A stretch of 64,000 nt of DNA from IMGVR_UViG_3300032236_001850:124001-188000; one strand, 5' to 3'. Positions 7,299 to 62,031 are shown, counted from the first letter of the stretch. The notes: generated from the sequence alone by a model not told the origin. Translations and numbers: made by a program.

Positions 7299-7322
7299 CA
7301 TACTATGTTACTAACATACTAT
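7299..7322. repeat. Nested palindrome element (CATASTATG-TTASTAA-CATASTAT), copy 1
   Basis: catactatgttactaacatactat in a divergent intergenic region. Confidence 0.9.
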
Positions 7323-7497
7323 CTACGCAGATCCCACCCAGGGCGCATATACGTTCGCGTATATGAACGCGCTATTAAAAACATATGTAGATCCGGTAAA
7401 ATGGTTTTACTTCAGCAGCAAACAAATAAACAAGCAAAAAACAAACTATCGGAACATTTCATAAAAAAATCGATAGAATCTTTGAAAATCCCGCAAA

Positions 7498-7680
7498 ATG
7501 GCAAAATTTATATCTCCTCAGAAAAAGTTGGAGAATGATGAATCACTAAGAAGAATCAAGATTCGTCTGGATATTAGATTTGGTAGATATAGAGATGAAA
7601 TGAAGAACGAGATACCAATCGGGATTAACGGTTCCAAGTACTACAGGGTTAAAAAACTAGAAAACAAAACGGATGAGTAG
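7498..7680 (+). CDS. Small basic hypothetical protein
   Basis: 60-aa ORF overlapping the next start. Confidence 0.6.
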   Translation: MAKFISPQKKLENDESLRRIKIRLDIRFGRYRDEMKNEIPIGINGSKYYRVKKLENKTDE

Positions 7681-7876
7681 AAAAGTTACATTAGCGGAGG
7701 GATTACGAGAAGCTGCAGGAAATCTCACAATAGTTTATATCTGTTACGCATTAATACAGTGGGAACCAAATCCACTGAAATGGAATCCAATAGTACAGTA
7801 CTTTGCCATTTTTATGTCGTGTATTTATTTTCCATATAGGGACAATCAAAGATGGGAGAGGGATAAGGACAAATAA
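7673..7876 (+). CDS. Small two-TM membrane protein
   Basis: Two hydrophobic segments flanking WEPNPLKW. Confidence 0.75.
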   Translation: MSRKVTLAEGLREAAGNLTIVYICYALIQWEPNPLKWNPIVQYFAIFMSCIYFPYRDNQRWERDKDK

Positions 7877-7921
7877 TCCCACGGTGTCCGCACATACACG
7901 ACCGCATTCGATATATAATGT

Positions 7922-8554
7922 ATGAAAATAATAAAGACATTCGAGAGTTTCGAGGAGAAGGAATACACCTTTGATGAACTATCACAAGATGCAAAGAATC
8001 ATGCAATAGAGAACGAGAGAGGTTCATTGTATGACAGTATGGGTGATTGGTGGTACGAAGGAACAATAGAGGATGAAGCACAAAAACTAAGGGATGAGGG
8101 ATTTGAAGATGTTGATATACAATTTTCAGGATTCCACAGTCAAGGTGATGGAGCTTCATTTACTGGCAGAGTATCAGACATTAAACTTTTTGTTAAAGGC
8201 ACTCTCGATATGAAAACCATGAGCGACCAGGTTTTAGATAACATTTACATCTCAGTGGTTAGAACAGACACCAGACACGTTCATGAAAACTCGGTTAGGT
8301 TTGATTGTGAAGTTGACGGTGAGGAAGAAATAGTTTTATTCAGAGCACCAGGTTCAAATCTAGATATAAAAATATCAATTCAGTCTCAGTGTGATAAAAT
8401 AGAAGAAGTCGGAGCACCTTGGGTCAAGAGTAGATGTAAGGAGATATATGAAAAACTCGGTAAGGAGTACGACAGCTACTTTGAAGAGGAACACATAATA
8501 GCAGACATTAAAGCAAACGACTGTAAGTTTGACGAAGACGGAGATTTAATTTAA
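7922..8554 (+). CDS. YTFxELS-family phage protein with CTS-like leader
   Basis: YTFDELSQDAK..., FSGFHSQGDGASF; GATATATA 4 nt upstream; paralogous to 9805..10410. Confidence 0.85.
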   Translation: MKIIKTFESFEEKEYTFDELSQDAKNHAIENERGSLYDSMGDWWYEGTIEDEAQKLRDEGFEDVDIQFSGFHSQGDGASFTGRVSDIKLFVKGTLDMKTMSDQVLDNIYISVVRTDTRHVHENSVRFDCEVDGEEEIVLFRAPGSNLDIKISIQSQCDKIEEVGAPWVKSRCKEIYEKLGKEYDSYFEEEHIIADIKANDCKFDEDGDLI

Positions 8555-8586
8555 AGCACATCAAAAAGATGTGCTTTTATTTTTTT
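8554..8586 (+). terminator. Intrinsic terminator
   Basis: AAGCACATC-aaaaa-GATGTGCTT then T run. Confidence 0.75.
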
Positions 8587-8634
8587 ATTCCGAAATGATT
8601 TCATATATTTGCAATGATAATTATAATTGTAACT

Positions 8635-9159
8635 ATGAAACACTTTCTGGATAACCTAAACATCTTCCAAGATAGAAACGACGGAAAATTAAAATTGCTA
8701 CCAAAATTAGACGGACTATCTGCTTCTTACACACCATATTCTGAATCATATAAAAGCAGATTACCAGAAATGCTTGCTTCAAGAACGGACAGTCAAATTA
8801 AAAGATTCGAAACGGAAGCAAGAGGTAACCTCGGCAAGGGTCTAAGACCGTACACTCTAGGAAAATACGATGAATTAAACGAGATCGCGGAACCAGATGC
8901 GGAAAAACTAATTGCAAAATATGTTGCTTTAAAACTTAGAAACCCAACTCCGGTTATACTTTGGCATTATCCAAGTATGGTTAAATTAGCTACACCACAT
9001 ATGATTTCAAGGATTGAGAAAATTCTTGAGTATGAAAAAACTAAAGCAGATTTATACCAAGCTATAGAGGATCTTGAGCATAGTCACAAAAGATACCTAG
9101 AAGGAAACGAAAAAACTATAGAATCAGTTCTTAAAAAAGGACACAATCTCATGATATAA
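8635..9159 (+). CDS. Hypothetical protein ending KGHNLMI
   Basis: ATG 8635 after promoter 8604; tail shared with next gene. Confidence 0.8.
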   Translation: MKHFLDNLNIFQDRNDGKLKLLPKLDGLSASYTPYSESYKSRLPEMLASRTDSQIKRFETEARGNLGKGLRPYTLGKYDELNEIAEPDAEKLIAKYVALKLRNPTPVILWHYPSMVKLATPHMISRIEKILEYEKTKADLYQAIEDLEHSHKRYLEGNEKTIESVLKKGHNLMI

Positions 9160-9734
9160 TGGAAAACGAAAACGATTACTATTCCTTTGCAGACCAATAT
9201 GGTAGTGTTAGAAATGACGGAATAAGAAGATATGTTACTTATGACGGCGAAACATCAAATGTGATTAGGGATAGAGGAATAGATGCTCTGCAAGCTATGC
9301 GAGAGGAAATTGAAAGATCATCAAGAATAAGTTTAGTCGATGCAGCTGCTTTAGCACAAATACAGGCATATGGAAACGAGCACAGAATGAGGATGGAAGC
9401 GAAAAAACCGGACTGTGTTCTTGACGATGTTTTGATGAATCTAAAAAGAGGACTAAAACCTTATTATCAAGAAAGACTCGATTACTACATAGGTGAAGTT
9501 GATTCCAATAAAGGGTGCTATATAGAATATGAACCAGGAATGGAATTGTTACCGTCACAAAAGGTGGAATGGTTACTGACAAAAACTGTTGAAAAGATAA
9601 ATGCTCTATACGAATCTAAGAAAAAAGCATATCACGATAAAATAAATGCTGAAAAGATATACAAGGATAAAATAGAAAGTTTAGAAAAATCGATAAAAAA
9701 TTATAAAACGAAGGGACACGACCTTATGATATAA
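9159..9734 (+). CDS. Hypothetical protein ending KGHDLMI
   Basis: TAATG coupling; tail shared with previous gene. Confidence 0.8.
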   Translation: MENENDYYSFADQYGSVRNDGIRRYVTYDGETSNVIRDRGIDALQAMREEIERSSRISLVDAAALAQIQAYGNEHRMRMEAKKPDCVLDDVLMNLKRGLKPYYQERLDYYIGEVDSNKGCYIEYEPGMELLPSQKVEWLLTKTVEKINALYESKKKAYHDKINAEKIYKDKIESLEKSIKNYKTKGHDLMI

Positions 9735-9804
9735 AAAAAATATCAAAATAAATTTTTTTAATAAAAAAGAATTTCCTACATTTGCATAACAAATAAAAAA
9801 AATC

Positions 9805-10410
9805 ATGAGAACCCTAAATATTTACACATTTTCAGAATTGTCGGAGGAAGCCAAAAAAAGAGCAATTCAGGACGTTAGAGAGGAGCTAAAAGAGAATACT
9901 CCTCATGAACTTGTGTTCGACTGGGCTATCGATGATTGCTGGTTATTCGAACCAAGCGAGCAAGTTATGAAGGAAACTTTTGGCGATCAATACTTGGAAG
10001 ATCTTGGTGACGATTTCCTTATGAAGAATTTGAGAAAGGGTATTTCTCACAAAAATGGTAATCTTAACGTCACACAGGCACTAAAGATAAACAATCACGA
10101 TATGTTTAAAACGTGGTTGGGTATTCCCAAGATCATTCAGAGATATGTTAACTTTTCAGTGATAGGTTCTGACGAAGATCCATCAACTTTGGATTTTGAA
10201 ATTCTTTTACCTAATTACGATCCCAGATCGTTAGCAATAAAAGGTTGCTCTGAAAATGCAGTTAAGTTATTTGACACCCACATGATTTATGTGGAGGGAA
10301 AAATCATAAACGGTATAAGAGAGTATTTCAATGACGATAATTTAGAGCAAGCCATACTCTCCAGCGATCGTTATGAGTTTTTAGAAAATGGCAGATTATA
10401 CAACAGCTAA
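9805..10410 (+). CDS. YTFxELS-family phage protein (no leader)
   Basis: YTFSELSEEAKKRAI...YEFLENG; own early promoter. Confidence 0.85.
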   Translation: MRTLNIYTFSELSEEAKKRAIQDVREELKENTPHELVFDWAIDDCWLFEPSEQVMKETFGDQYLEDLGDDFLMKNLRKGISHKNGNLNVTQALKINNHDMFKTWLGIPKIIQRYVNFSVIGSDEDPSTLDFEILLPNYDPRSLAIKGCSENAVKLFDTHMIYVEGKIINGIREYFNDDNLEQAILSSDRYEFLENGRLYNS

Positions 10411-12611: not shown

Positions 12612-12869
12612 ATGGCGCAAAACATTCACGTTGGTGATGATTTCAGAACAAATCCTCTAAGTTTAAAACCTGGAGGGTATGATGTTACTGTTATCTACCA
12701 AAACGGTAAGTCCTTCACTTACGACAAAATCAAAAACCCAGCAAACTACATTACTAGGATCTCATCAAATTCTAAATACGGTCAGATAGTAGAAATCCTT
12801 ATAGACGGAAATTCAACCTGGTCTATAGAGAGAAGAGGAGAGACTAACGAATTTGGTATAAATCTATAA
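12612..12869 (+). CDS. Hypothetical protein
   Basis: 85 aa, operonic spacing. Confidence 0.8.
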   Translation: MAQNIHVGDDFRTNPLSLKPGGYDVTVIYQNGKSFTYDKIKNPANYITRISSNSKYGQIVEILIDGNSTWSIERRGETNEFGINL

Positions 12870-51028: not shown

Positions 51029-51543
51029 CCCAACTCTCATAGAGGCATTCTAAAGGGACTTAGGAAGCAAACCATATAGAGAGATAGTCAGAATAATATA
51101 ACACAGACACGGCCAGGTAATCGCGTTTAACGACCCCCTTCGGAAGCCCCTCTGCATGTGTGAGTTACCACCCAGGGCTGTCCCAACAAGATTTCCTCGT
51201 CGCCCCGATTTCCCATTTCATTCCACTTCTCTCCACTTTGTTCCACTGGGCAAGAGTTTCCACACAGAAACCCACGTTTTCTTTAGGAAAAACCAAATCT
51301 TTTATATATCCGTGATTTTGGGACGAGGTTCCCTGAACACCCATCACTATCTCGCCCCGAACCATGCCTCTTCCCTACATCTCTCTATGTGGAATGGATC
51401 TCCTGCCTCTCTATTAGAGACGGAACATTCTATGTGGCATTATCTCTCTATGCTCTCTCTATAGGAATGACTACCGGGTTGGCCGGCCCTCACCCCTATC
51501 TTGGCCCCAAATTCCCCCATTGCCGGCAGAGGATATATAGTGT
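51029..51543. other. GC-richer non-coding locus with skew flip and CTCTCTAT repeats (candidate origin/terminus)
   Basis: CTCTCTAT at 51381, 51407, 51444, 51455, inverted copy at 51076; TGGCCGGCCC at 51480 inverted to 50530. Confidence 0.45.
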
Positions 51544-52185
51544 ATGAGACACCTTAAGATTTTTGAAATGAACCCAGCCTTCTACGAGGATCCACCGGAA
51601 CCAAAACGTGAGGGAGCGGATGTGGAGTACCCAGAGCATGAGCAGCTCTTCTCCCCTGTGTTCTGCCATGAGGGGTATCCAGAAGAAGATAAAGTCAGAG
51701 GAGAGAAAGGTTACCCTGACTTTGCCATAGTGATGGACAAGACACCTCAGAAAGCCATATGGGTTGTGAGAGATATTGACGATGTCATTCCCGAGAGCTA
51801 CCTGACCTATTGGGAAACGTCCGAAGGAGGCGAGCATGTCCAAGACACCAACTCCATCCTGAACTTTGCCACTGACGAATTCAAAGCCGGTAGATGGGTG
51901 GATGGCTTTGATGCTTGGGACGAGGATGAATGGGCAGTGGATCTTGTGAAGATCACCACTGTGGAAGATGTGGATTCCCTTATCCAAGATCTCTCCAACT
52001 TCATTAACCCGAGCCACGCCTCCTACTATGGCAAGGTGAGAAATCCCAAGATCAAAGATCACTACAGAATTAGTCACGTTCCAGGTGAGGGCGAGATCTC
52101 TTTGGCGAAGAGAGCAATCAGAGCGCTAGAGATATACAAGAGAAGGATTGAATCAAACACCGTCGGCGGGTCCACACCGGCTTAA
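51544..52185 (+). CDS. Acidic hypothetical protein with CTS-like leader
   Basis: MRHLKIFEM; GATATATA 4 nt upstream. Confidence 0.82.
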   Translation: MRHLKIFEMNPAFYEDPPEPKREGADVEYPEHEQLFSPVFCHEGYPEEDKVRGEKGYPDFAIVMDKTPQKAIWVVRDIDDVIPESYLTYWETSEGGEHVQDTNSILNFATDEFKAGRWVDGFDAWDEDEWAVDLVKITTVEDVDSLIQDLSNFINPSHASYYGKVRNPKIKDHYRISHVPGEGEISLAKRAIRALEIYKRRIESNTVGGSTPA

Positions 52186-52274
52186 TCCCAGCCCACTATG
52201 GAGTCCACTCTCCCAAGTCCAGTCCGGAACCCGGCCTCATGAATGGCCTTTCATTTTTCAAAAACAAAAGTAAT

Positions 52275-52315
52275 AAAAATCCTCGAGATAAAAAAATATT
52301 TCGAGGATTTTTTTT
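52275..52315 (+). terminator. Terminator overlapping next promoter
   Basis: AAAAATCCTCGA...TCGAGGATTTTT-T run. Confidence 0.8.
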
Positions 52316-52365
52316 ATTCGAAAGGATTTTGTATATTTGCAATGTAAACAATAAGGCCCCAGGTA

Positions 52366-52390
52366 CATACTATGTTACTAACATACTATG
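52366..52390. repeat. Nested palindrome element, copy 2
   Basis: catactatgttactaacatactatg. Confidence 0.9.
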
Positions 52391-52415
52391 TCTGAGACCA
52401 CGGCAAACACGAACT

Positions 52416-52619
52416 ATGCGCAGACTTAAGAACGGATGGGAGATCGCGGGAGCGACATCAATATGTATTGCTCTCGCGAGCATCTTTATATACATCATGT
52501 GGGAACTCGGCTTATATGGGATGCCTAGTACTACCGATGTGGTTGTCTCAGTAGTACTCACAGCTGTCACACTCTTTCTCTTTATCTGGAGCCCACCCGA
52601 CGAGAACTCTAATACATAG
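52416..52619 (+). CDS. 67-aa two-TM protein flanked by palindrome repeats
   Basis: MRRLKNGWEIAG...; stop codon lies inside repeat copy 3. Confidence 0.7.
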   Translation: MRRLKNGWEIAGATSICIALASIFIYIMWELGLYGMPSTTDVVVSVVLTAVTLFLFIWSPPDENSNT

Positions 52620-52640
52620 TATGTTACTAACATACTATGT
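52614..52640. repeat. Nested palindrome element, copy 3 (perfect 13-bp arms)
   Basis: ACATAGTATGTTA-C-TAACATACTATGT. Confidence 0.92.
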
Positions 52641-52683
52641 CTGGGACTGACCACGAACACGTACACGAACTAATTAATAGAAA

Positions 52684-52989
52684 ATGAAAACATATCAACT
52701 TAAAACACCTTACTCAGAGTACACCGTTATATTATCGGGCGGCACGTATGCGAACGGACGTCAAGCTATTCGCATACTAGACGCGGAGGATGGGTTACCA
52801 GTTATGACTGCCACTGTGAATGTCCCTGAGGTGGATCTGGAACCAGGTGAGATCATCATCAAGAACTACTCAGAGAACGAAGGGTGCTTGCCCTTTCTCA
52901 TCACCAACGGTGTTGTCTCCTCTGTCGAGAGATGGGTTGGCCACGGTATGGCTGTTGTGAAACTCCTGATAGACATAGACGATATATAG
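52684..52989 (+). CDS. DUF4313-like protein
   Basis: YANGRQAI...ATVNVP...IIKNYSENEG. Confidence 0.65.
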   Translation: MKTYQLKTPYSEYTVILSGGTYANGRQAIRILDAEDGLPVMTATVNVPEVDLEPGEIIIKNYSENEGCLPFLITNGVVSSVERWVGHGMAVVKLLIDIDDI

Positions 52990-53005
52990 AGGAAAACTCT
53001 ATAGA

Positions 53006-53380
53006 ATGAAACACCTAATGCTTTTTGAAAGCTTCTTTCGCCGCGGTGCGATGGATCCGACCGCCTTGCAATTGGTCAAAATCGGCGGTGCGGTTAATCC
53101 GGCTTTAGGCTTCCTTAAAAAACACGACATAGATACCCTTACCGAAGCTGGTATAGAGACCGAAGTGGTTGGAGAAATCACAGGGAAAGACGACTACGCT
53201 TTCTGGGATATCAACGGTGTTTTATCGGATCCCTATTATGTTGCTTTCACTCATCCTGGCAAGGAGAATTCCCTTATGACAAAGGAGAAGAATTTCGAGA
53301 TACATCCTGGTAAAATATACTTCCGAAGAAAGGGTGGTTGGGCGAAAGAAAACGTCAGTGATTTCATCCAATCAAGATAA
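53006..53380 (+). CDS. Hypothetical protein with CTS-like leader
   Basis: MKHLMLFESFF; GATATATA at 52981. Confidence 0.8.
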   Translation: MKHLMLFESFFRRGAMDPTALQLVKIGGAVNPALGFLKKHDIDTLTEAGIETEVVGEITGKDDYAFWDINGVLSDPYYVAFTHPGKENSLMTKEKNFEIHPGKIYFRRKGGWAKENVSDFIQSR

Positions 53381-53397
53381 TTTGACAATCGTTAAAG

Positions 53398-53425
53398 AAA
53401 AGCCTGATTTTAGTCAGGTTTTTTT
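53398..53425 (+). terminator. Intrinsic terminator
   Basis: AGCCTGA-ttttag-TCAGGTT-T run. Confidence 0.8.
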
Positions 53426-53563
53426 GTGCGTGCAGGTAGCGCTCGCTTCCTGTAATCTACCGTGGGAAATTTGAGGTTAAAATCAGGGGGGTAAAAATAA
53501 TTTGAAATTTTTTATTTTTATATGAAAAAATGTCATATATTTGCAAAACAAAATCACATCAAC

Positions 53564-53791
53564 ATGGAACTTTACATCTTCAAAATCATGGACGAACCCA
53601 ACACCTATGTGAAGGTGAGCACCAAAACATTTAAGTGTCGCCGTACGAAGAATATAAATGATTCAAGTTGGTGGTTTACAAAGAGGAATGCAAAGTCTTG
53701 GGAATTCTCGATTAAAACGAAATTCCCAAGTGCCACAATGATCCCCGTGGATATGTCATTAACCGAGGTTAAATTCCAATCTATCAAATGA
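53564..53791 (+). CDS. Hypothetical protein, C-terminal FQSIK
   Basis: ATG 53564 after early promoter. Confidence 0.78.
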   Translation: MELYIFKIMDEPNTYVKVSTKTFKCRRTKNINDSSWWFTKRNAKSWEFSIKTKFPSATMIPVDMSLTEVKFQSIK

Positions 53792-54060
53792 TGAAGGATT
53801 TGATAAACATAGGTCTTCACAATCACATGTCAGCGGTGCTCAAGGCAGACCTCCTGGTTATCGACGACAAGGTCTATAAAGACCGGTCCGGTAAATATGA
53901 TGGGGCAGGAGAGAACCCAAGGGTTCTAATCCCGGAAGAAGAGCTAGACAAGGTTAGAGTGGAAGTCAATGAGGCAGGAACAATATTATCCTATGATGGG
54001 TCCCAAGGAAATATTATTCTTATATCAACAGCACCAATTAAATTTCAACAAATAAAATGA
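53788..54060 (+). CDS. Hypothetical protein, C-terminal FQQIK
   Basis: ATGA coupling. Confidence 0.78.
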   Translation: MMKDLINIGLHNHMSAVLKADLLVIDDKVYKDRSGKYDGAGENPRVLIPEEELDKVRVEVNEAGTILSYDGSQGNIILISTAPIKFQQIK

Positions 54061-54392
54061 GAGCATACCACGCAACATCCGCAAGCAACGTGCCATCCAT
54101 ACAAAAGGATGGTCTGATTATCAAATGGGATTATGTTTACCTTACAGATTCAATCGATTCGGCTCTCCGTTGGATTGGCTTCAGATTACAAGCCGTCGGT
54201 GAGAAGACAATTGCCGTGATTGAGGTTGAGGTTGATGAGACAAAGCTTGAGGAAGGCATGGACCATTCACCGATGATGGTTTCTCTATTCGGTGTTGGTA
54301 AATCATGGACCTCATCGGAACCAATCCCTGCTGCTTCGATAAAAGAAGTGCATCTATATATGATTAACGATAAAAAGGAACAACATGCCTAG
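54057..54392 (+). CDS. ART-fold (KptA/Tpt1-like) protein
   Basis: AYHATSASNVPSIQKDGL, VYLTDS, VIEV. Confidence 0.7.
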   Translation: MRAYHATSASNVPSIQKDGLIIKWDYVYLTDSIDSALRWIGFRLQAVGEKTIAVIEVEVDETKLEEGMDHSPMMVSLFGVGKSWTSSEPIPAASIKEVHLYMINDKKEQHA

Positions 54393-54912
54393 TACAATTA
54401 AAAAAAGAACCTGGTGCACAACATGCCAGGAATTCGAACTGTTTGAATCACACCTAACATCACATGAAACTATCATCATAGATTCAGAAGGCAGTGAGAT
54501 AAAGAAAACATCAAAGACCACATGCGATACATGCGGTAATGAATATGTGCCATACAGCCTGTCCGAGGTGCCTGAGGAGAAGATCCTCGAGCAAAGAGAA
54601 AGATACAGACAGATGAAGAAGACCGAATTCATCAAGATGTTAAGCGCCTATCAGGATATGAGCAGATCAAATATCCTTGCCGACATGATGAGAGAGGTCT
54701 CGGATAAACCTGTTGGATACACTGTGAGAGAGGATGATGCTGGTCAGGAAGCAATTGACACTGCGGAAAGAGCAGCAAGGGATGCTCAGAGATTGGCAAA
54801 CATAGAATTCAAAGAGCAATTCCGAGGTGCACAACGTAATGACAAATGCCGATGCGGATCAGGCAACAAGTATAAAAAGTGTTGTCTACCTAAGGTTAAT
54901 GCCATACGTTAA
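54385..54912 (+). CDS. Zinc-ribbon plus SEC-C motif protein
   Basis: CTTC/CDTC at N-terminus; RNDKCRCGSGNKYKKCC at C-terminus. Confidence 0.85.
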   Translation: MPSTIKKRTWCTTCQEFELFESHLTSHETIIIDSEGSEIKKTSKTTCDTCGNEYVPYSLSEVPEEKILEQRERYRQMKKTEFIKMLSAYQDMSRSNILADMMREVSDKPVGYTVREDDAGQEAIDTAERAARDAQRLANIEFKEQFRGAQRNDKCRCGSGNKYKKCCLPKVNAIR

Positions 54913-54914
54913 CA

Positions 54915-54938
54915 CATACTATGTTACTAACATACTAT
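54915..54938. repeat. Nested palindrome element, copy 4
   Basis: catactatgttactaacatactat, 2 nt after a stop codon. Confidence 0.9.
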
Positions 54939-54957
54939 CCACACGCGTACATTTAAA

Positions 54958-55095
54958 ATGAAAAATCCAATAAAATCCTGGTGGAATGATTTGTATCCCT
55001 ATCAGAAGAGAGACGTAATCAACGGTATAATCAACACGGTAAAATATATTTTGATAATAATATTTATAATCTATTTAATAAAGAGGTACTTATGA
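54958..55095 (+). CDS. 45-aa TM peptide (not in ORF track)
   Basis: MKNPIKSWWNDL...YILIIIFIIYLIKRYL; ATGA coupling to next gene. Confidence 0.65.
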   Translation: MKNPIKSWWNDLYPYQKRDVINGIINTVKYILIIIFIIYLIKRYL

Positions 55096-55262
55096 TACAA
55101 ATAGGACTTTGGTTTGCAGGATTCATGCTGGGACTCGGCATCGGTGGAAGGATAGGACAATACATTGAAAGAAAAGATTGGGACCAGCTCATCAGGGACG
55201 GGAAGCTTCCAAAACCTGACCAACGGTGGGAAGCGGTCGATCAGGAAAAATCCTATAAATAA
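55092..55262 (+). CDS. 56-aa TM peptide (not in ORF track)
   Basis: MIQIGLWFAGFMLGLGIGG... Confidence 0.65.
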   Translation: MIQIGLWFAGFMLGLGIGGRIGQYIERKDWDQLIRDGKLPKPDQRWEAVDQEKSYK

Positions 55263-55317
55263 TTTTTTTATTTGGGAATGATTCCATATATTTGTCATGT
55301 AATTAAAAACACTTATT

Positions 55318-55539
55318 ATGGCACATGTAATAAAAGACATTGAGATAGACGGAGACTTATACAATATAAGATACTTCTTCGACGCGGACCAATCGGAAGA
55401 CGGGATAGACATCTATAGAGCAGACGACGGTGCACACATTGGAGAGATCCTCGGAAAAAGATTTCCAGATGAGGATGATGAAGATGATATGGATTACATC
55501 AAAAAGGTATTAAAGGATTGGTTGGACAACAACATATAA
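55318..55539 (+). CDS. Acidic hypothetical protein
   Basis: After early promoter. Confidence 0.8.
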   Translation: MAHVIKDIEIDGDLYNIRYFFDADQSEDGIDIYRADDGAHIGEILGKRFPDEDDEDDMDYIKKVLKDWLDNNI

Positions 55540-55552
55540 TGTACGCGTAGAC

Positions 55553-55792
55553 ATGGCAAAGAGAAAAACCATCGGTGTTTTGGAGATGATCGATTATGCA
55601 AACACCCAACTGGCAAGAAAGGACACAGATGCCACAAAGGAATTCAAGGAAGGGATTTGTGTCATGGTCGAGAAGATAATGTTTCTTACCGATTCATATT
55701 CGGGATTTCAATTTCTGGATAATAATGATTGTGAGATTCACGCATTGGGTCACGTCTCCAGAAAATATTACAAACCTGTCTTTAAAAAATAA
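55553..55792 (+). CDS. Hypothetical protein
   Basis: 79 aa. Confidence 0.8.
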   Translation: MAKRKTIGVLEMIDYANTQLARKDTDATKEFKEGICVMVEKIMFLTDSYSGFQFLDNNDCEIHALGHVSRKYYKPVFKK

Positions 55793-55859
55793 TTCCAAAA
55801 TAATTTTTTTATTTGAAAAAGGTTTTCTATATTTGCTCAGTAATTAAAATCAAACCAAA

Positions 55860-56177
55860 ATGGCAGAATTAACCAGAGATCAAAAAATGGAAAAGATAAG
55901 AACCAATGTGGAAGTTTATCTTATCAAAAATGCAGAATCATGTAATGTTCCATTCACATCATTAATCAATGACGAATCTAAGGACCACATTGTAAATATA
56001 GGAACATCAATCATGGCGAACAGATTGGGTATCGAAACATATCCAGGATCCTTCGTTAAAGCCATATTGGAAAATGACCTTTATGAAGCAATCAACAGAG
56101 CAGACTCAGTCAACCGCGGTGCTATTCCATTCTATGTCACAATGATTCACAACCTTGGAATCAATTTAGCAGAATAA
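55860..56177 (+). CDS. Phage hypothetical protein
   Basis: PGSFVKAILENDLYEAINRAD motif. Confidence 0.82.
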   Translation: MAELTRDQKMEKIRTNVEVYLIKNAESCNVPFTSLINDESKDHIVNIGTSIMANRLGIETYPGSFVKAILENDLYEAINRADSVNRGAIPFYVTMIHNLGINLAE

Positions 56178-56215
56178 GCTTTCTTTGGTAGCTTATAAAC
56201 CAGACACACAACTAT

Positions 56216-56239
56216 AAGAGGCTTCGGCCTCTTTTTTTT
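56216..56239 (+). terminator. Intrinsic terminator (identical family copy 1)
   Basis: AAGAGGC-TTCG-GCCTCTT-T run. Confidence 0.92.
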
Positions 56240-56265
56240 GTGGTGTGCATTGTGCTTGCACAGAC

Positions 56266-56284
56266 ACACCGTTGTCGACGGTGT
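56266..56284. repeat. CACCG-N7-CGGTG element, copy 2
   Basis: acaccg-ttgtcga-cggtgt. Confidence 0.9.
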
Positions 56285-56428
56285 TTTGGATGTTGCCATG
56301 AACATGCCGATTTAACATATGGATTTTTATGGATGTCCTATGGTAAACACCGTGGTAGAAACTTTAACGTTTTTAATCGTTTGTATGTAAAACCTTTCTC
56401 TTATATTTGCCTCGTAATTAAAACCAAA

Positions 56429-56923
56429 ATGAAAACAGAAACACACAGAATCGGAGACAAGGACAAGGTATACAAAGTATCCGAGTCGGGTACCTATTAT
56501 TCTAATGAAACACCAGATGAGGTGATAAGAGTATTAGAATCGCTAAGAGGTACACACCAAAGAGTTAAAATCTATCTTGGAGATAGAGAGACAGGCAGAG
56601 ATTGGATGGAGGAAGATGGCAAGGTTGGTAAGATAGGCAGAAGCACTGGTCCAATTAAAATTCCAATACTTCTTAGAACTATGAACAGCCACGGTGGCGG
56701 AGCACTGCTAGATGATTGCATCGTTAAGATAGTAACCTCGCCAACATCATCGACAAGAACACTATACCAGCACCCGAGGTATTACCAACCTGCCATGGAA
56801 ATCACAAATGAAGGTCTGGAAGGTAAGCCAGAGTACACTCACACATTAAGAATCGGCGGTGAGGTCTATAGCAGACACACTTCAATGAGATCAGCCCAAA
56901 GATTGGTCGCATTATTAAAATAA
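56429..56923 (+). CDS. Phage hypothetical protein
   Basis: ATG 56429; GRDWMEE...IGRSTGPIKIP...GGALLDDCIVKI. Confidence 0.85.
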   Translation: MKTETHRIGDKDKVYKVSESGTYYSNETPDEVIRVLESLRGTHQRVKIYLGDRETGRDWMEEDGKVGKIGRSTGPIKIPILLRTMNSHGGGALLDDCIVKIVTSPTSSTRTLYQHPRYYQPAMEITNEGLEGKPEYTHTLRIGGEVYSRHTSMRSAQRLVALLK

Positions 56924-57019
56924 AAACTTTAACGAAAAAAACCTTAAAATAATTTTTTTATCTAAATAGAATTTTTTACATTTACGGAGTAATTAATTAA
57001 ACACTTAAATACATTCACC

Positions 57020-57523
57020 ATGAACAAAAATGAAAAAAAAGCTGGAAACAGCGCAGTAGCAGCTTCGGCTGGGAAAGTTGAAAAAATGGCAAAAGCAGTT
57101 GTCAAAAAAGAAACTGCTAAAGTAGATGCTCCTGAGGCAGCAGTGGCTGAGGTGCCTGCACCGCTAGTACCGCACATCAACGGTGCCTTCGAAGTGGGGT
57201 CAAGAATCGAAACTTCATTGGTTTCTCCATTGAAAGTTTTCGGTAAAAAAGAAGCAACTGGTACTCCGGCTCAAATGAAGCCATGTGCTGCAATCATCTT
57301 AGAAAAGTTGGCCATCGCTGGTCCTACTGGAACTAACTTGATTAGAGTTAAAAAACCAGGTTCAACACGTATTTTCTACACAACTGAGGAAAACCTAATC
57401 GTAGGAGAGGGTGCACCAGCAGCGGTGGTAACGGCTCCAGTCGTTAAGGAGGAAAAACCTGCACCTGCACCAAAGGCTGCAAAAGCTCCAAAAGCTGAAA
57501 CAGTTGCAGAGACTGCTGAGTAA
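57020..57523 (+). CDS. Ala/Lys/Pro-rich protein with central small domain
   Basis: KPAPAPKAAKAPKAE tail. Confidence 0.8.
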   Translation: MNKNEKKAGNSAVAASAGKVEKMAKAVVKKETAKVDAPEAAVAEVPAPLVPHINGAFEVGSRIETSLVSPLKVFGKKEATGTPAQMKPCAAIILEKLAIAGPTGTNLIRVKKPGSTRIFYTTEENLIVGEGAPAAVVTAPVVKEEKPAPAPKAAKAPKAETVAETAE

Positions 57524-58869: not shown

Positions 58870-58887
58870 GAAATCCCACACACAATT

Positions 58888-59921: not shown

Positions 59922-60155
59922 ATGGAAAAAAAATTATTTTGTGTGATGTTCACCAGTCGGGATGACTGGGACTCACCAACTGTTGTCTTCGTTAATGCAA
60001 CGGACAGGGACAAAGCTTACTTTGCCGCTCTAAAGAAAATTGGATTTACTGAAGAGGAAGATGAGGAGATGAGAGAGCGAGGAGACCATGATAACGTCAT
60101 CATCGAAGTGGATGACACCATAGACGAAGATTACGAACCAACTGAAGATGAATAA
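59922..60155 (+). CDS. Acidic hypothetical protein
   Basis: After promoter 59891. Confidence 0.8.
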   Translation: MEKKLFCVMFTSRDDWDSPTVVFVNATDRDKAYFAALKKIGFTEEEDEEMRERGDHDNVIIEVDDTIDEDYEPTEDE

Positions 60156-60157
60156 TT

Positions 60158-60352
60158 ATGGCAAAGAAAACTGTATTGGATTTTCTCTTATCCATAGCTA
60201 TCACGGTCTTGGTGTATTCTATTCTTACCGCACCACATCTATGTTTAATCCTTTTTGGATTCGGGTTTGCTTACTCTCAGGGTTGGTGTATTACATGTGG
60301 TGTGGCTTCGGCTATTATCGGTCATATTATATCAGACAAGTTGAAAATTTAA
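60158..60352 (+). CDS. Small membrane protein
   Basis: Two to three hydrophobic segments. Confidence 0.75.
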   Translation: MAKKTVLDFLLSIAITVLVYSILTAPHLCLILFGFGFAYSQGWCITCGVASAIIGHIISDKLKI

Positions 60353-60419
60353 CGTTTTAAATCATTGCCACGTAAAAAAGATTTCTTATATTAGCCACGT
60401 AATTAAAATCAATCACATC

Positions 60420-60641
60420 ATGAGCACATTAAGACCAGGTGATCCAGTAAGAGTCACACAAGAACCAAAATCAAGATTCAATCAACACCCAACCAAAGTT
60501 GGCATAGGTCATGTCTATGTACGTAGCGGACAAAGTGGAAATTCACTCTATGTGGCAGTGGCTTGGGAAGATGGAAATTGTTGCAATGGTTTATTAAGTT
60601 CCTTTACAACTGTAGAAAAAATAAATATTTCTAAAATATAG
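60420..60641 (+). CDS. SH3/KOW-like small protein
   Basis: LRPGDPVRV...VAWEDG; paralog of 63154..63504. Confidence 0.78.
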   Translation: MSTLRPGDPVRVTQEPKSRFNQHPTKVGIGHVYVRSGQSGNSLYVAVAWEDGNCCNGLLSSFTTVEKINISKI

Positions 60642-60732
60642 GGAATAAAAATGAAACATTAGGTATTATTACTACTATAATATCTGTTAAATCGGATTTA
60701 ACAATTCAATTTGATATTCATGTTATGTTTTT

Positions 60733-60760
60733 AAAGGAGCTTACCCGGCTCCTTTTTTTT
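60733..60760 (+). terminator. Intrinsic terminator
   Basis: AAGGAGC-ttacccg-GCTCCTT-T run. Confidence 0.88.
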
Positions 60761-60770
60761 ATGTATAAAA

Positions 60771-60795
60771 CATACTATGTTAGTAACATACTATG
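60771..60795. repeat. Nested palindrome element, copy 5
   Basis: catactatgttagtaacatactatg between terminator and promoter. Confidence 0.9.
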
Positions 60796-60874
60796 TCCAC
60801 GCGAGAACTTTAACGTTTGGCCTCGTGCGTATATGAAAAAGATTTCTTATATTTGCTTTATAATTAAATGGAAC

Positions 60875-61090
60875 ATGAAGTTTTTTCTTGTCACATCAGA
60901 CGAAATGCAAACCCTAAGGGATAAGGTTAACCAATTCTTGGATGAGCATCCTGGCATCATCCTACATAGTCATCAATTCGCAACATGTGGGACAACTGGT
61001 AAGAACAAATATGTTTCCATATTTTATGACGATGCACCAGAATATTTAAAAATAAAAAACAATGACAAAGGAACAGAAAGAACTTTATAA
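60875..61090 (+). CDS. Cse60-like small protein
   Basis: ATG 60875; LRDKVNQFLDEH...VSIFY. Confidence 0.75.
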   Translation: MKFFLVTSDEMQTLRDKVNQFLDEHPGIILHSHQFATCGTTGKNKYVSIFYDDAPEYLKIKNNDKGTERTL

Positions 61091-61235
61091 AAGGATCAAA
61101 GCAAAAGCAAAGGACAGAGGGGTAAAAACCGTGGACGAGTTACACGACCTAATCGCAGACGAGTTTTACGACGACGGTGTAACTGGAGCGGACTTTGAAT
61201 TCATCAAAGACTCACTTAGACTCAAGAGGTTTTAA
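61062..61235 (+). CDS. 57-aa hypothetical protein (not in ORF track)
   Basis: MTKEQKELYKRIKAKAKDRGV... Confidence 0.7.
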   Translation: MTKEQKELYKRIKAKAKDRGVKTVDELHDLIADEFYDDGVTGADFEFIKDSLRLKRF

Positions 61236-61259
61236 TTACACATACTTCTTTTTGAAAGG

Positions 61260-61286
61260 GGCTTTCTTTATAAGAAAGCCTTTTTT
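61260..61286 (+). terminator. Intrinsic terminator
   Basis: GGCTTTCTT-tat-AAGAAAGCC-T6. Confidence 0.88.
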
Positions 61287-61324
61287 GTTGGCATTGACAT
61301 GGAAAATGCATGTACATGCATATT

Positions 61325-61341
61325 CACCGGCGGCGACGGTG
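61325..61341. repeat. CACCG-N7-CGGTG element, copy 5
   Basis: caccg-gcggcga-cggtg. Confidence 0.9.
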
Positions 61342-61440
61342 TGGAGGATGTAGGCGGATTAATTCGGAAAATAATTCGGATTTATCGTTGGTATATAAAA
61401 AAGGTTACTTATATTTGCATGTAATTAAAATCAAAACATT

Positions 61441-61632
61441 ATGGACGAGACATTAAAAGGTAAGAGAATCACATTAATAAAAATGGGTGATGACCCAAAT
61501 CCAATAAAGGCAGGAGAAATGGGAACCATCCAAGGTGTGGATGGCATCGGCCAGATCCACGTCAATTGGGACAACGGTAGAAGTCTAGCGCTAATACCAG
61601 GTACCGATGTATATCAAATTATAAGAGAATAA
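61441..61632 (+). CDS. DUF4314 protein
   Basis: GKRITLIKMGDDPNPIKAGEMGTIQGVDGIGQIHVNWDNGRSLALIPGTD. Confidence 0.88.
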   Translation: MDETLKGKRITLIKMGDDPNPIKAGEMGTIQGVDGIGQIHVNWDNGRSLALIPGTDVYQIIRE

Positions 61633-61811
61633 TGTACAAGTTTGGAAAATTCCCAACCCATACGGGTGGTCTAAAAAAAGGCCAATATGCGGATAAAAGG
61701 ATGGATCCTAGAAGAATACAGATTGTCAGAAGAGCAGAGAAGATTCAACACACATTTCCAAATAGAAGTTTATTCTCAGCTATAAGATATATTTTGAAAT
61801 ACGGTAATTAA
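61632..61811 (+). CDS. 59-aa basic protein (not in ORF track)
   Basis: TAATG coupling; MYKFGKFPTHTGG... Confidence 0.65.
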   Translation: MYKFGKFPTHTGGLKKGQYADKRMDPRRIQIVRRAEKIQHTFPNRSLFSAIRYILKYGN

Positions 61812-61840
61812 TAATTGGTTAGGTTTTTTAATTCAGAATC

Positions 61841-61866
61841 AGGCTTTCTTAAAGAAAGCCTTTTTT
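61841..61866 (+). terminator. Intrinsic terminator
   Basis: GGCTTTCTT-a-AAGAAAGCC-T6, near copy of 61260. Confidence 0.8.
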
Positions 61867-61900
61867 GTGACCAAAGGATTTTATAGGCAAGACCATAAAA

Positions 61901-61917
61901 CACCGGCGGCAACGGTG
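61901..61917. repeat. CACCG-N7-CGGTG element, copy 6
   Basis: caccg-gcggcaa-cggtg. Confidence 0.88.
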
Positions 61918-62009
61918 GAAAAGATGTTGAAAGATGTCAAAAAGGATGAAGAAGAAATGAAGATGATGTATAAAGATGTACAAAGAGATGTATCCTTCAC
62001 ACCGCGGTT

Positions 62010-62031
62010 CATACTATGTTAGTAACATACT
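62010..62031. repeat. Nested palindrome element, copy 6
   Basis: catactatgttagtaacatact. Confidence 0.88.

What the first reader, a model, noticed from the sequence alone, without database searches (positions are those of the whole stretch)
7299..62031. Dispersed 25-bp nested palindrome CATASTATG-TTASTAA-CATASTATG (6 copies)
Seen: at 7299, 52366, 52614, 54915, 60771 and 62010; intergenic or overlapping a stop, and followed by a C-rich CCACG/CTACG/CCACACG-like tract. Each 9-mer and the 7-mer spacer is itself a palindrome with a free central C/G, so the whole is palindromic except at three S positions. Copies often sit just after a stop or terminator or beside a promoter. Inference: tandem binding site for a dimeric or tetrameric protein, or a recombinase core site.
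Basis: partly seen in the sequence, partly recalled or inferred. Interest (0 to 1): 0.75.

Follow-up and report, generated by a model that had tools for sequence, protein, structure and literature searches.

The report
Jumbo-phage promoter-like motif tied to own sigma
The 25-bp "nested palindrome" is a real, strongly conserved, one-directional control signal at the head of gene groups in a family of giant water-dwelling phages. It is most likely the promoter read by a sigma factor that these phages carry themselves, not a recombination site.

Summary
Six copies lie in the window (7299, 52366, 52615, 54915, 60771, 62010), all on the + strand, against 0 expected by chance.

The window belongs to a 434.5-kb T4-like jumbo phage. 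The whole genome has 10 copies, all in one orientation, all within genome 131-193 kb.

The motif recurs at orthologous sites in related 219-430 kb phages and in more than 120 aquatic metagenome stretches. It is almost absent from 185,000 bacterial species genomes.

- **Conservation.** Core positions are 98% identical between orthologues, against 75-81% for the flanks. Positions 5, 13 and 17 are C or G only.
- **No selected symmetry or hairpin.** C21 is invariant while its mirror, position 5, is free. The 3' arm decays, the middle 7-mer varies in the wider family, and pairing does not covary.
- **Context.** About 90% of copies are intergenic and co-oriented with the flanking genes. They are often 3-15 nt after a terminator and upstream of any other promoter box. 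Sometimes the motif is the only conserved element before a gene.
- **No recombination signal.** I found no recombinase, no phage RNA polymerase and no rearrangement at copies.
- **Link to a sigma factor.** The motif occurs only in genomes whose RpoS/RpoD-like sigma belongs to one clade (100/99 support). In several lineages it lies 0.4-3 kb upstream of that sigma gene.

Best reading (about 0.5): it is the promoter of the phage sigma holoenzyme, with sATACT as the -10 element and a start in CGCGAGGG. No transcript data exist.

The parts
7299..7323 (+). Motif copy 1 (CATACTATGTTACTAACATACTATC). It lies in the divergent gap between the - strand gene 6985-7245 and the first + strand genes.
   Evidence: In the alignment with relative G001 it is the only conserved + strand element before the gene at 7498; no conserved TAnnTTTG box lies between them.
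52366..52390 (+). Motif copy 2, first of a twin pair 249 bp apart. It is followed by a leader of about 90 nt that is conserved in three phages.
   Evidence: The host-type promoter box 26 nt upstream is absent in relative G004, while the motif and leader are kept.
52615..52639 (+). Motif copy 3, the only fully self-complementary copy. Its bases 3-5 (TAG) are the stop of the 41-codon ORF. The ATG of gene 52684 lies 45 nt downstream, with no other promoter box between.
54915..54939 (+). Motif copy 4. It starts 2 nt after the stop of gene 54385-54912 and ends 19 nt before the ATG of a conserved 45-aa membrane-protein gene (54958-55095).
   Evidence: The ORF is conserved with synonymous changes in G001 and G004.
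60771..60795 (+). Motif copy 5. It starts 10 nt after an intrinsic terminator and lies upstream of a 'class B' promoter module.
62010..62034 (+). Motif copy 6 (2 mismatches in the degenerate 3' arm), upstream of a 'class B' promoter module.
7246..7298 (-). Host-type promoter on the - strand (T-run plus TAATTTTG box) for gene 6985-7245. It abuts copy 1.
   Evidence: sequence read directly. The TAnnTTTG -7 box of Bacteroidota is established knowledge recalled from memory.
52309..52340 (+). 'Class A' host-type promoter (T-run, then the TATATTTG box at 52332-52339) just upstream of copy 2.
52391..52496 (+). Conserved leader after copy 2, including a 10-bp stem hairpin at 52444-52479.
52497..52619 (+). 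ORF of 41 codons encoding a hydrophobic peptide between the twin copies. It is conserved in G001 and ends at the TAG inside copy 3.
52684..52989 (+). First gene after copy 3 (101 aa, function unknown).
60736..60760 (+). Intrinsic terminator (GGAGC..GGCTCC followed by T8) ending 10 nt before copy 5.
60806..60865 (+). 'Class B' module (AACTTTAACG ... TATATTTGC) between copy 5 and the gene at 60875-61090.
62046..62104 (+). 'Class B' module between copy 6 and the gene at 62118-62312.
7498..7680 (+). First + strand gene downstream of copy 1, starting a 45-kb block of + strand genes.

Best explanation
The motif is the core of a phage-specific promoter that heads transcription units in the early/middle region of a T4-like jumbo phage.

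**How it would work (inferred).** The phage has no RNA polymerase of its own. It carries three sigma-like genes. Host RNA polymerase loaded with the phage's 300-aa RpoS/RpoD-like sigma ('sigma1', genome 204386-205288, - strand) recognises the element. In this genome sigma1 is itself expressed from a host-type early promoter.

**Proposed anatomy (inferred).**
- Positions 17-22 (sATACT) are the -10 hexamer. The invariant A18 and T22 would be the -11A and -7T, and the C/G-only position 17 would be -12.
- Positions 23-28 are the discriminator.
- Transcription starts at G29-G31 inside the conserved CnCGCGAGGG.
- The very conserved upstream half (A sATAsTATG nTrs TAA) lies where a spacer would normally be. 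It must therefore contact extra parts of sigma1 or a second phage protein.

**Shown:** existence, strong purifying selection, directionality, intergenic head-of-operon placement, phage specificity, and co-distribution with one sigma clade.

**Inferred:** that it initiates transcription, which sigma reads it, and where the start lies.
For: 1. **Selection on the DNA sequence.** In 15 orthologue pairs (this phage against relatives G001 and G004), 265/270 core positions are identical, against 75-81% for the flanks. The motif is also kept letter for letter inside a conserved 97-aa gene, where it is read as KDTMLVTYSPREG.
2. **Directional and asymmetric.** All 10 copies have one orientation. A at -1 is found in 109/124 copies although the search did not force it. 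C21 is invariant while position 5 is free. The downstream CGCGAGGG box is conserved.
3. **Placement.** 81/89 copies are intergenic and the flanking genes are co-oriented (58/63 upstream, 61/72 downstream). A terminator-like hairpin lies within 100 nt upstream in 31/114 copies, and 21 of these end 3-15 nt before the motif. Other promoter-like boxes lie downstream of it (18, 19 and 12 copies) and rarely upstream (3, 3 and 1), at variable distance (9-19 or 38-53 nt).
4. **Sole candidate promoter in some places:**
   - copy 7299, at the start of the + strand block;
   - copies 52615 and 54915, which are 45 and 19 nt before an ATG;
   - a copy in relative G002, 27 nt before an ATG;
   - the unit at genome 191949, built as terminator, motif, about 95 nt, terminator, and conserved in G004.
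5. **Machinery.** No T7-type or multisubunit RNA polymerase was found. Three sigma-like genes are present. sigma1 aligns to RpoS/RpoD over regions 1.2-4.2 and has a host-type promoter box upstream.
6. **Link to sigma1.**
   - All 9 motif-bearing genomes at least 88% complete carry a sigma1 homologue 2-14 kb from the copy cluster.
   - In the 511 kb of metagenome DNA fetched around copies, sigma1 homologues occur in 8 loci and sigma2 or sigma3 in none. In six of these loci sigma1 lies 0.44-3 kb downstream of a copy on the same strand.
   - Of 48 viral contigs with more distant sigma1-like genes, only one has the motif, about 1 kb upstream of its sigma.
   - In a tree of 84 such sigmas, all 17 motif-linked ones form one clade with 100/99 support.
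7. **Residues at -12.** sigma1 has K and L where E. coli sigma70 has Q437 and T440, the residues that read position -12 (alignment). That changes at these residues shift -12 preference from T towards C is recalled from memory. It would fit a -12 that is C/G here.
8. **Phage-specific.** Only 7 stretches match in 185,579 species genomes, all of them metagenome-assembled bins.
Against: - No transcript data exist. No RNA run could be listed, so no start site has been seen.
- There is no recognisable -35 hexamer. The most conserved bases fall where a sigma70 promoter has its spacer, which is unusual.
- A few copies are followed almost at once by a terminator (genome 192886; two copies in L110). A promoter there would give RNAs of only about 35-45 nt.
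- One copy lies 26 nt downstream of a host-type promoter box (52366), and one lies inside a gene.
- The sigma-motif co-distribution is confounded by shared descent of the phages.
- The attempted sigma1-DNA complex prediction was not folded and gives no evidence either way.
Confidence: 0.5

Rival explanations
1. The motif is an operator or upstream activating site for an unidentified phage DNA-binding regulator, such as a small ribbon-helix-helix or helix-turn-helix oligomer. This protein would switch the adjacent promoters on or off, or block read-through from upstream. The motif itself would not start transcription.
For: - In this genome the element is built of three palindromic 7-mers spaced 8 bp apart.
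- It always lies upstream of the other promoter boxes.
- In some lineages it sits 9-19 nt before a GATATATA box, which centres it near -37 to -45 from that presumed start.
- Copy 52366 lies just downstream of a host-type promoter, where a repressor would sit.
- A conserved small helical protein gene (79-96 aa) lies between the motif and sigma1 in several lineages.
Against: - Constraint is not symmetric, and the middle 7-mer is not conserved in the wider family.
- The distance to downstream promoter boxes varies without helical phasing (38, 41, 50, 53 nt; 9-19 nt).
- Several copies have no other promoter to regulate.
- The conserved directional CGCGAGGG box is unexplained by this reading.
- No HTH or RHH Pfam family was found among 121 window ORFs.
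Confidence: 0.27
2. The motif is the recognition site of a phage nickase and marks localized single-strand interruptions, as in T5, phiKMV-like and tf phages. The nicks might serve as loading sites for the sliding clamp that activates T4-type late promoters.
For: - Copies are on one strand only, number about 4-10 per genome, and keep conserved positions among relatives. Phage tf and its relatives show the same pattern (PMC3517423).
- There is weak letter similarity: TACT/RTGMC (tf) against TACTATG, and R/GCGCRGG (T5) against CGCGAGG.
- The phage is T4-like (portal gp20, capsid gp23).
- In some lineages a GATATATA late-type box follows the motif.
- An HNH domain is present among the window ORFs.
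Against: - The TACTATG match needs C at position 5, which is G in 61% of copies.
- About 90% of copies are intergenic, at the head of operons. That suggests a role in gene expression and is not something I know to be reported for nick sites.
- In this genome no copy lies near the late-type boxes.
- Only assembled contigs were available, so read ends could not be examined.
Confidence: 0.05
3. The motif acts in RNA or single-stranded DNA as a hairpin. It would be a processing site (RNase III-like), a stability or antitermination element, or an N4-type hairpin promoter.
For: - All copies are on the transcribed strand.
- The sequence is quasi-palindromic, and mean folding z-score is -1.5.
- Some copies lie between a stop codon and a terminator.
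Against: - Only 1 of 38 copies is fully paired.
- The variable positions pair no better than chance: 16/38, 21/38 and 19/38, with no compensatory change.
- What is conserved is the sequence, not the pairing.
- No Rfam family matches.
- No N4-like virion polymerase was found.
Confidence: 0.04
4. The motif is a core site for site-specific recombination, or the end of a small mobile cassette that shuffles the small genes between copies.
For: - The sequence is palindromic and dispersed in a region of small variable ORFs.
- Copies with extended similarity exist: genome 190817 and 192886 share about 30 nt beyond the motif.
- One copy is embedded in frame in a gene.
Against: - No tyrosine or serine recombinase was found.
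- Copies are orthologous and syntenic in relatives.
- Contigs of four runs show no motif-bounded joint. The only real indel (53776-54046) is not at a copy.
- All copies are in direct orientation.
Confidence: 0.03

Closest known systems
Promoter classes read by phage-encoded sigma factors (Bacillus phage SPO1 gp28 and gp33/34; T4 gp55 late promoters TATAAATA)
   Same: A phage supplies its own sigma, which redirects host RNA polymerase to a promoter sequence unlike the host's. The promoters are co-oriented with the genes, few to tens per genome, and phage-specific. This genome also has a T4-late-like box (GATATATA) and a short region-2-only sigma.
   Different: No transcription data exist here. 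The element is much longer (about 22 conserved bp plus flanking boxes). It is quasi-palindromic, has C/G-only wobble positions and lacks a recognisable -35 at 16-18 bp. The examples themselves are recalled from memory, not tested here.
T4 middle promoters (MotA box at -30 plus sigma70 -10, with AsiA remodelling sigma)
   Same: The class combines a -10-like hexamer with a conserved upstream box that replaces the -35. It is used after the early genes and often sits in tandem with early or late promoters. A small helical protein gene lies next to sigma1 in several lineages, which is reminiscent of AsiA.
   Different: No MotA or AsiA homologue was identified or specifically searched for. The conserved box here abuts the -10 instead of being centred at -30. 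The sigma is the phage's, not the host's.
T7-type promoters (23 bp; AT-rich recognition part, then the GGGAGA start)
   Same: It is a long, nearly invariant, directional motif with an AT-rich body (...ACTAT) followed by a G/C-rich start region. Copy numbers are similar, and copies are often placed after terminators or inside the end of an upstream gene.
   Different: No single-subunit RNA polymerase gene is found (Pfam on the large ORFs).
Localized nick sites of phages T5, phiKMV-like and tf (PMC3517423)
   Same: Copies lie on one strand only, number a few to about 14 per genome, and keep their positions among relatives. Short letter matches exist.
   Different: Copies here lie almost only in intergenic, head-of-operon positions. 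The letter match depends on a free position. Nicks could not be examined.
T4 PeSL cassettes (early promoter plus stem-loop flanking mobile small genes)
   Same: Terminator-plus-regulatory-motif modules recur between small variable ORFs.
   Different: No shuffling bounded by the motif was seen in the relatives compared.

Membership tests
sigma70-family promoter | A -10 hexamer with A at -11 and T at -7, placed 6-8 nt upstream of the start | tested here: inconclusive
   sATACT (positions 17-22) has A18 invariant (38/38) and T22 near-invariant (37/38) in the set where these positions were not forced. A C-G step follows 6-7 nt downstream. No start site has been mapped.
sigma70-family promoter | A -35 element 16-18 bp upstream of the -10 | tested here: not met
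   Positions -6 to -1 read y-y-n-a-a-A; only the last A is conserved (109/124). The conserved block lies in the would-be spacer.
sigma70-family promoter | A cognate sigma is present | tested here: met
   A 300-aa sigma with regions 1.2-4.2 aligns to RpoS/RpoD. The motif co-distributes with one clade of this sigma.
T7-type single-subunit RNA polymerase promoter | The phage encodes a T7-like RNA polymerase | tested here: not met
   PF00940 finds nothing in six frames, although the control set holds no positive genome. Pfam on 18 large ORFs gives none.
N4-type hairpin promoter | A conserved extruded hairpin (stem kept by covariation) and a giant virion RNA polymerase | tested here: not met
   1/38 copies are fully paired and there is no covariation. 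The largest ORFs are tail, baseplate or collagen-like proteins.
Site-specific recombination core site | A recombinase gene, and rearrangements joining copies | tested here: not met
   PF00589 and PF00239 are absent. Relatives are syntenic. No motif-bounded joints appear in contigs of four runs.
Symmetric operator of a dimeric or tetrameric repressor | Equal constraint on the two half-sites | tested here: not met
   C21 is 38/38 against position 5 at 22 C / 16 G. G9 is 35/38 against position 17 at 23 C / 14 G. Positions 1-3 are conserved against degenerate 23-25.
MetJ-like array of tandem 8-bp boxes | Each 8-bp box is conserved as a palindrome | tested here: not met
   The middle box is TTAsTAA only in this lineage. 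In 124 copies position 10 is T68/A27/G28 and position 12 is A60/G51/C13.
Localized phage nick site | A physical nick at the motif in virion DNA | not testable with these tools
   Only assembled contigs of the runs are held, with no read ends.
RNA-guided transcription (dCas12f with an ECF sigma) | A Cas12f/TnpB-like gene linked to the ECF sigma | tested here: not met
   PF07282 is absent. Neighbours of the ECF sigma have no such Pfam hit. Free C/G swaps would also break guide pairing.
Known RNA families (Rfam) | A match to a covariance model | tested here: not met
   No match in the window at gathering score, and none in 9 kb to its right at E up to 1.

The most novel reading that the evidence does not exclude
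The motif is a genetically encoded, strand-specific nick site placed at the head of transcription units. In a T4-like phage it would serve as a fixed loading point for the sliding clamp that activates transcription. It would be a hard-wired form of the 'nick as enhancer' known for T4 late promoters in vitro. It would also give a function to the unexplained localized nicks of T5-, phiKMV- and tf-like phages.
Probability: 0.04. Interest if true: 0.85.

Novelty: new variant of a known kind. Interest (0 to 1): 0.5.

Why it matters
Giant phages from water are known almost only as sequences, and how they time their gene expression is unknown. This element gives a concrete, testable handle.

- It is a long, nearly invariant signal shared by a whole clade of 219-434 kb phages in lakes, ponds, estuaries and the sea.
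- It is tied to one clade of phage-borne sigma factors.

If it is that sigma's promoter, it defines a regulon (a 'middle' class) in uncultured phages. It would also supply a promoter/sigma pair that is orthogonal to the unusual promoters of Bacteroidota hosts.

It would further show an odd recognition rule: positions that must be C or G but accept either. That rule could teach something about how the upstream edge of the -10 element, or the minor groove, is read.

If it is ordinary, it is still a useful marker for annotating transcription units in these genomes.

Tried and rejected
- **RNA evidence.** No RNA run could be listed for the stretch. The one read-laying run therefore went to DNA contigs. 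It showed only repeats of the promoter modules and one unrelated 269-bp indel.
- **Phage RNA polymerase.** PF00940, PF00562 and PF00623 searches, a DFDGD motif scan, Pfam and PHROGs on 25 large ORFs, and an Atlas look-up of the 1849-aa ORF (baseplate gp8-like) all came back negative.
- **Complex prediction.** The sigma1-plus-motif-DNA job was counted but not folded, so it is no evidence either way.
- **Function of flanking genes.** Pfam and PHROGs on genes next to the copies gave only unknowns: SEC-C motif, phrog_5162, phrog_37545.
- **Regulators.** Bulk Pfam scans of 121 window ORFs and 141 ORFs to the right returned no HTH or RHH family. For the second set only the top 25 of 74 families are shown.
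- **Literature.** A search for the motif letters found nothing relevant.
- **GenBank phages.** No close relative and no motif match were found.
- **RNA-guided transcription idea** (PMC13472631): no Cas12f-like domain is present.
- **Hairpin reading:** rejected on pair counts.
- **Motif ATG as a start codon:** the ATG at positions 7-9 gives an ORF that is not conserved at copy 7299.
- **Apparent inversion between loci L077 and L080:** it is explained by a single T14C change in a nearly symmetric copy.

Full report
**1. The observation**

The pattern CATASTATG-TTASTAA-CATASTATG, searched with up to 3 mismatches, occurs six times in the window. All six are on the + strand: 7299, 52366, 52615 (not 52614), 54915, 60771 and 62010. 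None appeared in 100 dinucleotide-preserving shuffles. The 9-mer alone occurs 9 times against 0.45 expected.

The window is bases 124001-188000 of a 434,509-bp virus record with direct terminal repeats and 35% G+C. The whole genome has ten copies. The other four lie just right of the window, at genome 188404, 190817, 191949 and 192886. All ten have the same orientation.

A weight matrix built from the copies scores them at 44-62 bits. The best unrelated site in the genome scores 14.8. So this is a sharply defined family of ten, confined to genome 131-193 kb.

**2. The genome around it**

- Nearly all genes are on the + strand.
- The phage is T4-like. It has portal gp20, capsid gp23, a neck protein and a tail sheath. 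It carries 31 tRNA genes at 210-229 kb.
- No T7-type or multisubunit RNA polymerase was found.
- It encodes three sigma-like proteins:
  - sigma1: 300 aa, RpoS/RpoD-like, genome 204386-205288, - strand;
  - sigma2: 222 aa, ECF type, closest to a Bacteroidetes subfamily;
  - sigma3: 119 aa, with region 2 only.
- Three other promoter-like families are visible:
  - 'Class A': a T-run followed by TATATTTGC, about 30 nt before ATGs. The box fits the TAnnTTTG -7 element of Bacteroidota (recalled from memory). It is common from window 8.6 kb to 57 kb.
  - 'Class B': the same box preceded by AACTTTAACG-N8-ATCGTTG, from window 56 kb to genome 193 kb.
  - 'Class L': GGATATATA before genes at 200-434 kb.
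- The source is freshwater or pond.
- The host is probably a Bacteroidota. Three hints point that way: the class A box, the ECF sigma type, and a motif-bearing contig binned with a Saprospirales genome.

**3. Conservation**

The motif is found in five other viral contigs with a strict pattern and in 15 with a relaxed one. These include genomes of 219, 289, 319, 343, 348, 373, 373 and 430 kb.

By contrast it occurs in only 7 stretches of 185,579 bacterial and archaeal species genomes, all of them metagenome bins. It is therefore a phage signal, not a host regulator's site.

The two nearest relatives (G001 and G004, about 75-85% identical in DNA) are syntenic, and their copies sit at orthologous places. 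Over 15 orthologue pairs:

| Positions | Identical | Share |
|---|---|---|
| 18 core positions | 265/270 | 98% |
| S positions 1, 5, 13, 17, 25 | 55/75 | 73% |
| 60-nt flanks | – | 75-81% |

Every change at an S position is C to G or G to C.

**4. Anatomy from 38 and 124 copies**

- **Invariant or nearly so:** A at -1 (109/124, not forced by the search), A2 T3 A4, T6 A7 T8, G9, T11, T14 A15 A16, A18 T19 A20 C21 T22.
- **C or G only, about half each, never A or T:** positions 5, 13 and 17. These three vary independently of each other.
- **Position 1:** mostly C.
- **Beyond position 22 conservation decays:** 23 is A or C; 24 is mostly T; 25 is C or G.
- **Flanks:** upstream there is a C-rich tract at -9 to -5, then a-a-A. 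Downstream most copies carry CnCGCGAGGG.
- **Middle 7-mer:** TTAsTAA is a palindrome only in this lineage. In the wider family position 10 is T, A or G and position 12 is A, G or C.

C21 is fixed while its mirror, position 5, is free. G9 is fixed while its mirror, position 17, is free. The left end is conserved while the right end is not.

Pairing is not selected either. Only 1 of 38 copies would form the full 12-bp hairpin. The variable pairs match in 16, 21 and 19 of 38 copies. This speaks against a symmetric dimer or tetramer site and against an RNA or single-strand hairpin.

**5. Context**

- Of 89 distinct metagenome copies, 81 are intergenic by a crude ORF call. This is in genomes that are about 92% coding. 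The flanking genes run the same way as the motif: 58/63 upstream and 61/72 downstream. Most exceptions are chance hits or spurious ORFs.
- A hairpin plus T-run lies within 100 nt upstream of 31/114 copies. In 21 of these it ends 3-15 nt before the motif.
- Other promoter-like boxes lie downstream of the motif within 80 nt: TAnnTTTG in 18 copies, GATATATA-like in 19, AACTTTAAC in 12. They seldom lie upstream (3, 3 and 1).
- The spacing to those boxes varies: 9-19 nt to GATATATA and 38-53 nt to TATATTTGC. This fits a separate tandem promoter better than an activator site at a fixed distance.

Each window copy has its own setting:

- **Copy 7299** lies in the divergent gap that opens the 45-kb + strand block. 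Against G001 it is the only conserved + strand element before the first gene at 7498.
- **Copy 52366** lies 26 nt after a class A box. That box is missing in G004, which keeps the motif and the 90-nt leader.
- **Copy 52615** holds the stop codon of a conserved 41-codon membrane peptide and lies 45 nt before gene 52684.
- **Copy 54915** fills a 46-nt gap between a stop codon and the ATG of a conserved 45-aa gene.
- **Copies 60771 and 62010** precede class B modules. The first follows a terminator by 10 nt.

Outside the window:

- The copy at 190817 lies inside a conserved 97-aa membrane-protein gene and is kept letter for letter in three phages.
- The copy at 191949 heads a unit built as terminator, motif, about 95 nt, terminator. 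This unit is conserved in G004.
- The copy at 192886 is followed after 8 nt by a terminator.

**6. Recombination**

No tyrosine or serine recombinase domain is found in six frames. Related genomes show no inversion or exchange bounded by copies.

Contigs of four DNA runs laid on window 51500-57400 give one real difference. It is a 269-bp deletion (53776-54046) that is not at a copy. The other 'joints' are other copies of the repeated promoter modules. Contigs drop rare variants, so low-frequency events are not excluded.

**7. Link to the phage sigma**

sigma1 has a class A box upstream (TATCTTTG), so it should be made early.

- **Co-occurrence.** Every motif-bearing genome that is at least 88% complete (nine in all) has a sigma1 homologue at 39-84% identity. 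It lies 2-14 kb from the cluster of 4-10 copies.
- **Proximity.** In the 511 kb of metagenome DNA fetched around motif copies, tblastn finds sigma1 homologues in eight loci and sigma2 or sigma3 in none. In six of those loci, representing about four lineages, sigma1 lies 0.44-3 kb downstream of a copy on the same strand. The motif is the first element after a terminator there. The same holds in viral genomes G009 and G020.
- **Specificity.** sigma1-like genes are common in viral contigs (417 relatives). Of 48 contigs carrying the more distant ones, 12 of them complete genomes, only G020 has the motif.
- **Phylogeny.** In a maximum-likelihood tree of 84 such proteins, the 17 motif-linked sigmas form one clade with 100/99 support. 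The clade also holds two near-identical fragments and two short fragments whose contigs end near the gene. None of the tested contigs of the 63 remaining sequences has the motif.

This is the pattern expected of a sigma and its promoter. It is also what shared descent alone would give, so it is support and not proof.

**8. Mechanism proposed**

The mechanism rests on the universal need of sigma70-family factors for A at -11 and T at -7, which is established knowledge.

- The best fit is sATACT (positions 17-22) as the -10 hexamer.
- That places the start at G29-G31 in CGCGAGGG.
- The C/G-only position 17 then becomes -12.

In the alignment to RpoS, sigma1 has K and L at the positions of sigma70 Q437 and T440. 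These residues read -12, and the substitutions are conserved across the clade. From memory, changes at these residues shift -12 preference from T to C. That would fit, but I have not tested it.

sigma1 also differs at the residues that read TG of an extended -10 and at those that read the -35. This agrees with the lack of either element.

Two things remain unexplained. The first is why positions 1-16, the would-be spacer, are the most conserved part. The second is why positions 5 and 13 accept C or G but not A or T. Either sigma1 makes unusual contacts, perhaps minor-groove or shape reading, or a second phage protein binds there. A small helical protein encoded next to sigma1 in several lineages is a candidate.

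An alternative register has TAAsAT (positions 14-19) as the -10 and a start at 26-28. It is not excluded.

**9. Comparison with the known**

The element works most like the promoter classes of phage-encoded sigmas (SPO1, T4 late) and like T4 middle promoters, where a conserved box replaces the -35. It looks like a T7-type promoter but lacks the polymerase.

Localized nick sites share the one-strand, few-copy pattern (PMC3517423). The motif's intergenic head-of-operon placement, however, points to a role in gene expression rather than to nicking.

RNA-guided transcription by dCas12f with an ECF sigma (PMC13472631) was considered and not supported. No paper in the library holds the motif letters, and GenBank phages hold no close relative.

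**10. Verdict**

The feature is real, strongly selected and phage-specific. It is best read as a new variant of a known kind: a promoter class for a phage-borne sigma factor. Confidence is about 0.5 because no transcript ends are available. The main rival, at about 0.27, is a binding site for an unidentified regulator.

Noticed in passing
window 8604, 12235, 13449, 15252, 16487, 18246, 19988, 22913, 24329, 26237, 27574, 29914, 31410, 33121, 33838, 35155, 41281, 52332, 53536, 55287, 55828 (+ strand): A second repeat family ('class A'): AATAATTTTTTTATTcgaAAaggATTTCaTATATTTGCaatGTAAttaaaa, about 25-35 nt before ATGs. The TAnnTTTG box fits Bacteroidota housekeeping promoters, so these are probably the host-read early promoters.
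   Followed up: partly
window 56402, 60387, 60848, 62087, 62440, 63122, and genome 189090-192364: A third family ('class B'): AAAACTTTAACG-N8-ATCGTTG, then 12-15 nt, then TATATTTGCttaGTAATTAAAAC. The upstream part (AAAC-N15-CGTT) resembles ECF-sigma promoters (recalled from memory) and could belong to the phage's ECF-type sigma at genome 274045-274713.
   Followed up: partly
genome 200-434 kb (outside the window): GGATATATA is enriched upstream of genes (26 of 201 upstream regions at 232-434 kb). It resembles T4 late promoters. A 119-aa sigma with region 2 only (genome 281665-282024) may read it. In other phage lineages this box follows the 25-bp motif by 9-19 nt.
   Followed up: partly
window 52497-52619: A 41-codon ORF for a hydrophobic peptide (MWELGLYGM...FLFIWSPPDENSNT) lies between the twin motif copies and is conserved in relative G001. 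It is preceded by a conserved leader with a 10-bp hairpin (52444-52479).
   Followed up: partly
genome 190718-191011 (L017:2718-3011): A 97-aa membrane-protein gene, conserved in three phages, carries a full motif copy plus the CACGCGAGGG box in frame (KDTMLVTYSPREG).
   Followed up: yes
window 53776-54046: A 269-bp stretch that removes most of ORF 53788-54060 is missing in the contigs of three other runs (X2-X4). This is a strain-level indel unrelated to the motif.
   Followed up: no
L070:458-712, L083:948-1211, L059:5463-5726, L104:4167-4406: A small helical protein (79-87 aa; pairs at 26-38% identity, E 3e-10 to 5e-5) is encoded immediately upstream of the sigma1 homologue in several distant lineages. 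tblastn at E 1e-3 finds no homologue in this genome. It may be a sigma partner.
   Followed up: partly
L050, L054, L084, L094, L107, L117 (metagenome loci): A conserved short unit follows the motif: GGTATATAGGG, then TAATCCCATGGAC...GTCCGGGATCAAATAACCCGTTTT, ending in a terminator. It looks like a small RNA gene of about 50-60 nt.
   Followed up: no
G003 (L042, reverse strand), about 45 nt after the motif copy at position 12621 of the reversed locus: A tRNA-like sequence of about 115 nt has matching acceptor ends (GGACAG...CTGTCC), a T-arm and a long internal insertion. ARAGORN did not call it.
   Followed up: no
window 4138-4773 (+), and other window ORFs: A DNA/RNA non-specific endonuclease (PF01223, E 2.5e-34) lies among - strand genes left of copy 1. 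Bulk Pfam scanning of window ORFs also found HNH, Lar, CHAP, two glucosaminidases and a KaiC/RecA-like ATPase. Their exact ORFs were not located.
   Followed up: no
genome 210278-228985: 31 tRNA genes lie in a 19-kb cluster to the right of the motif region.
   Followed up: no
genome 192200-192240 (- strand): A class A-type promoter on the - strand points back towards the motif copy at 191949. The 280-nt stretch between them may therefore be transcribed from both strands.
   Followed up: no
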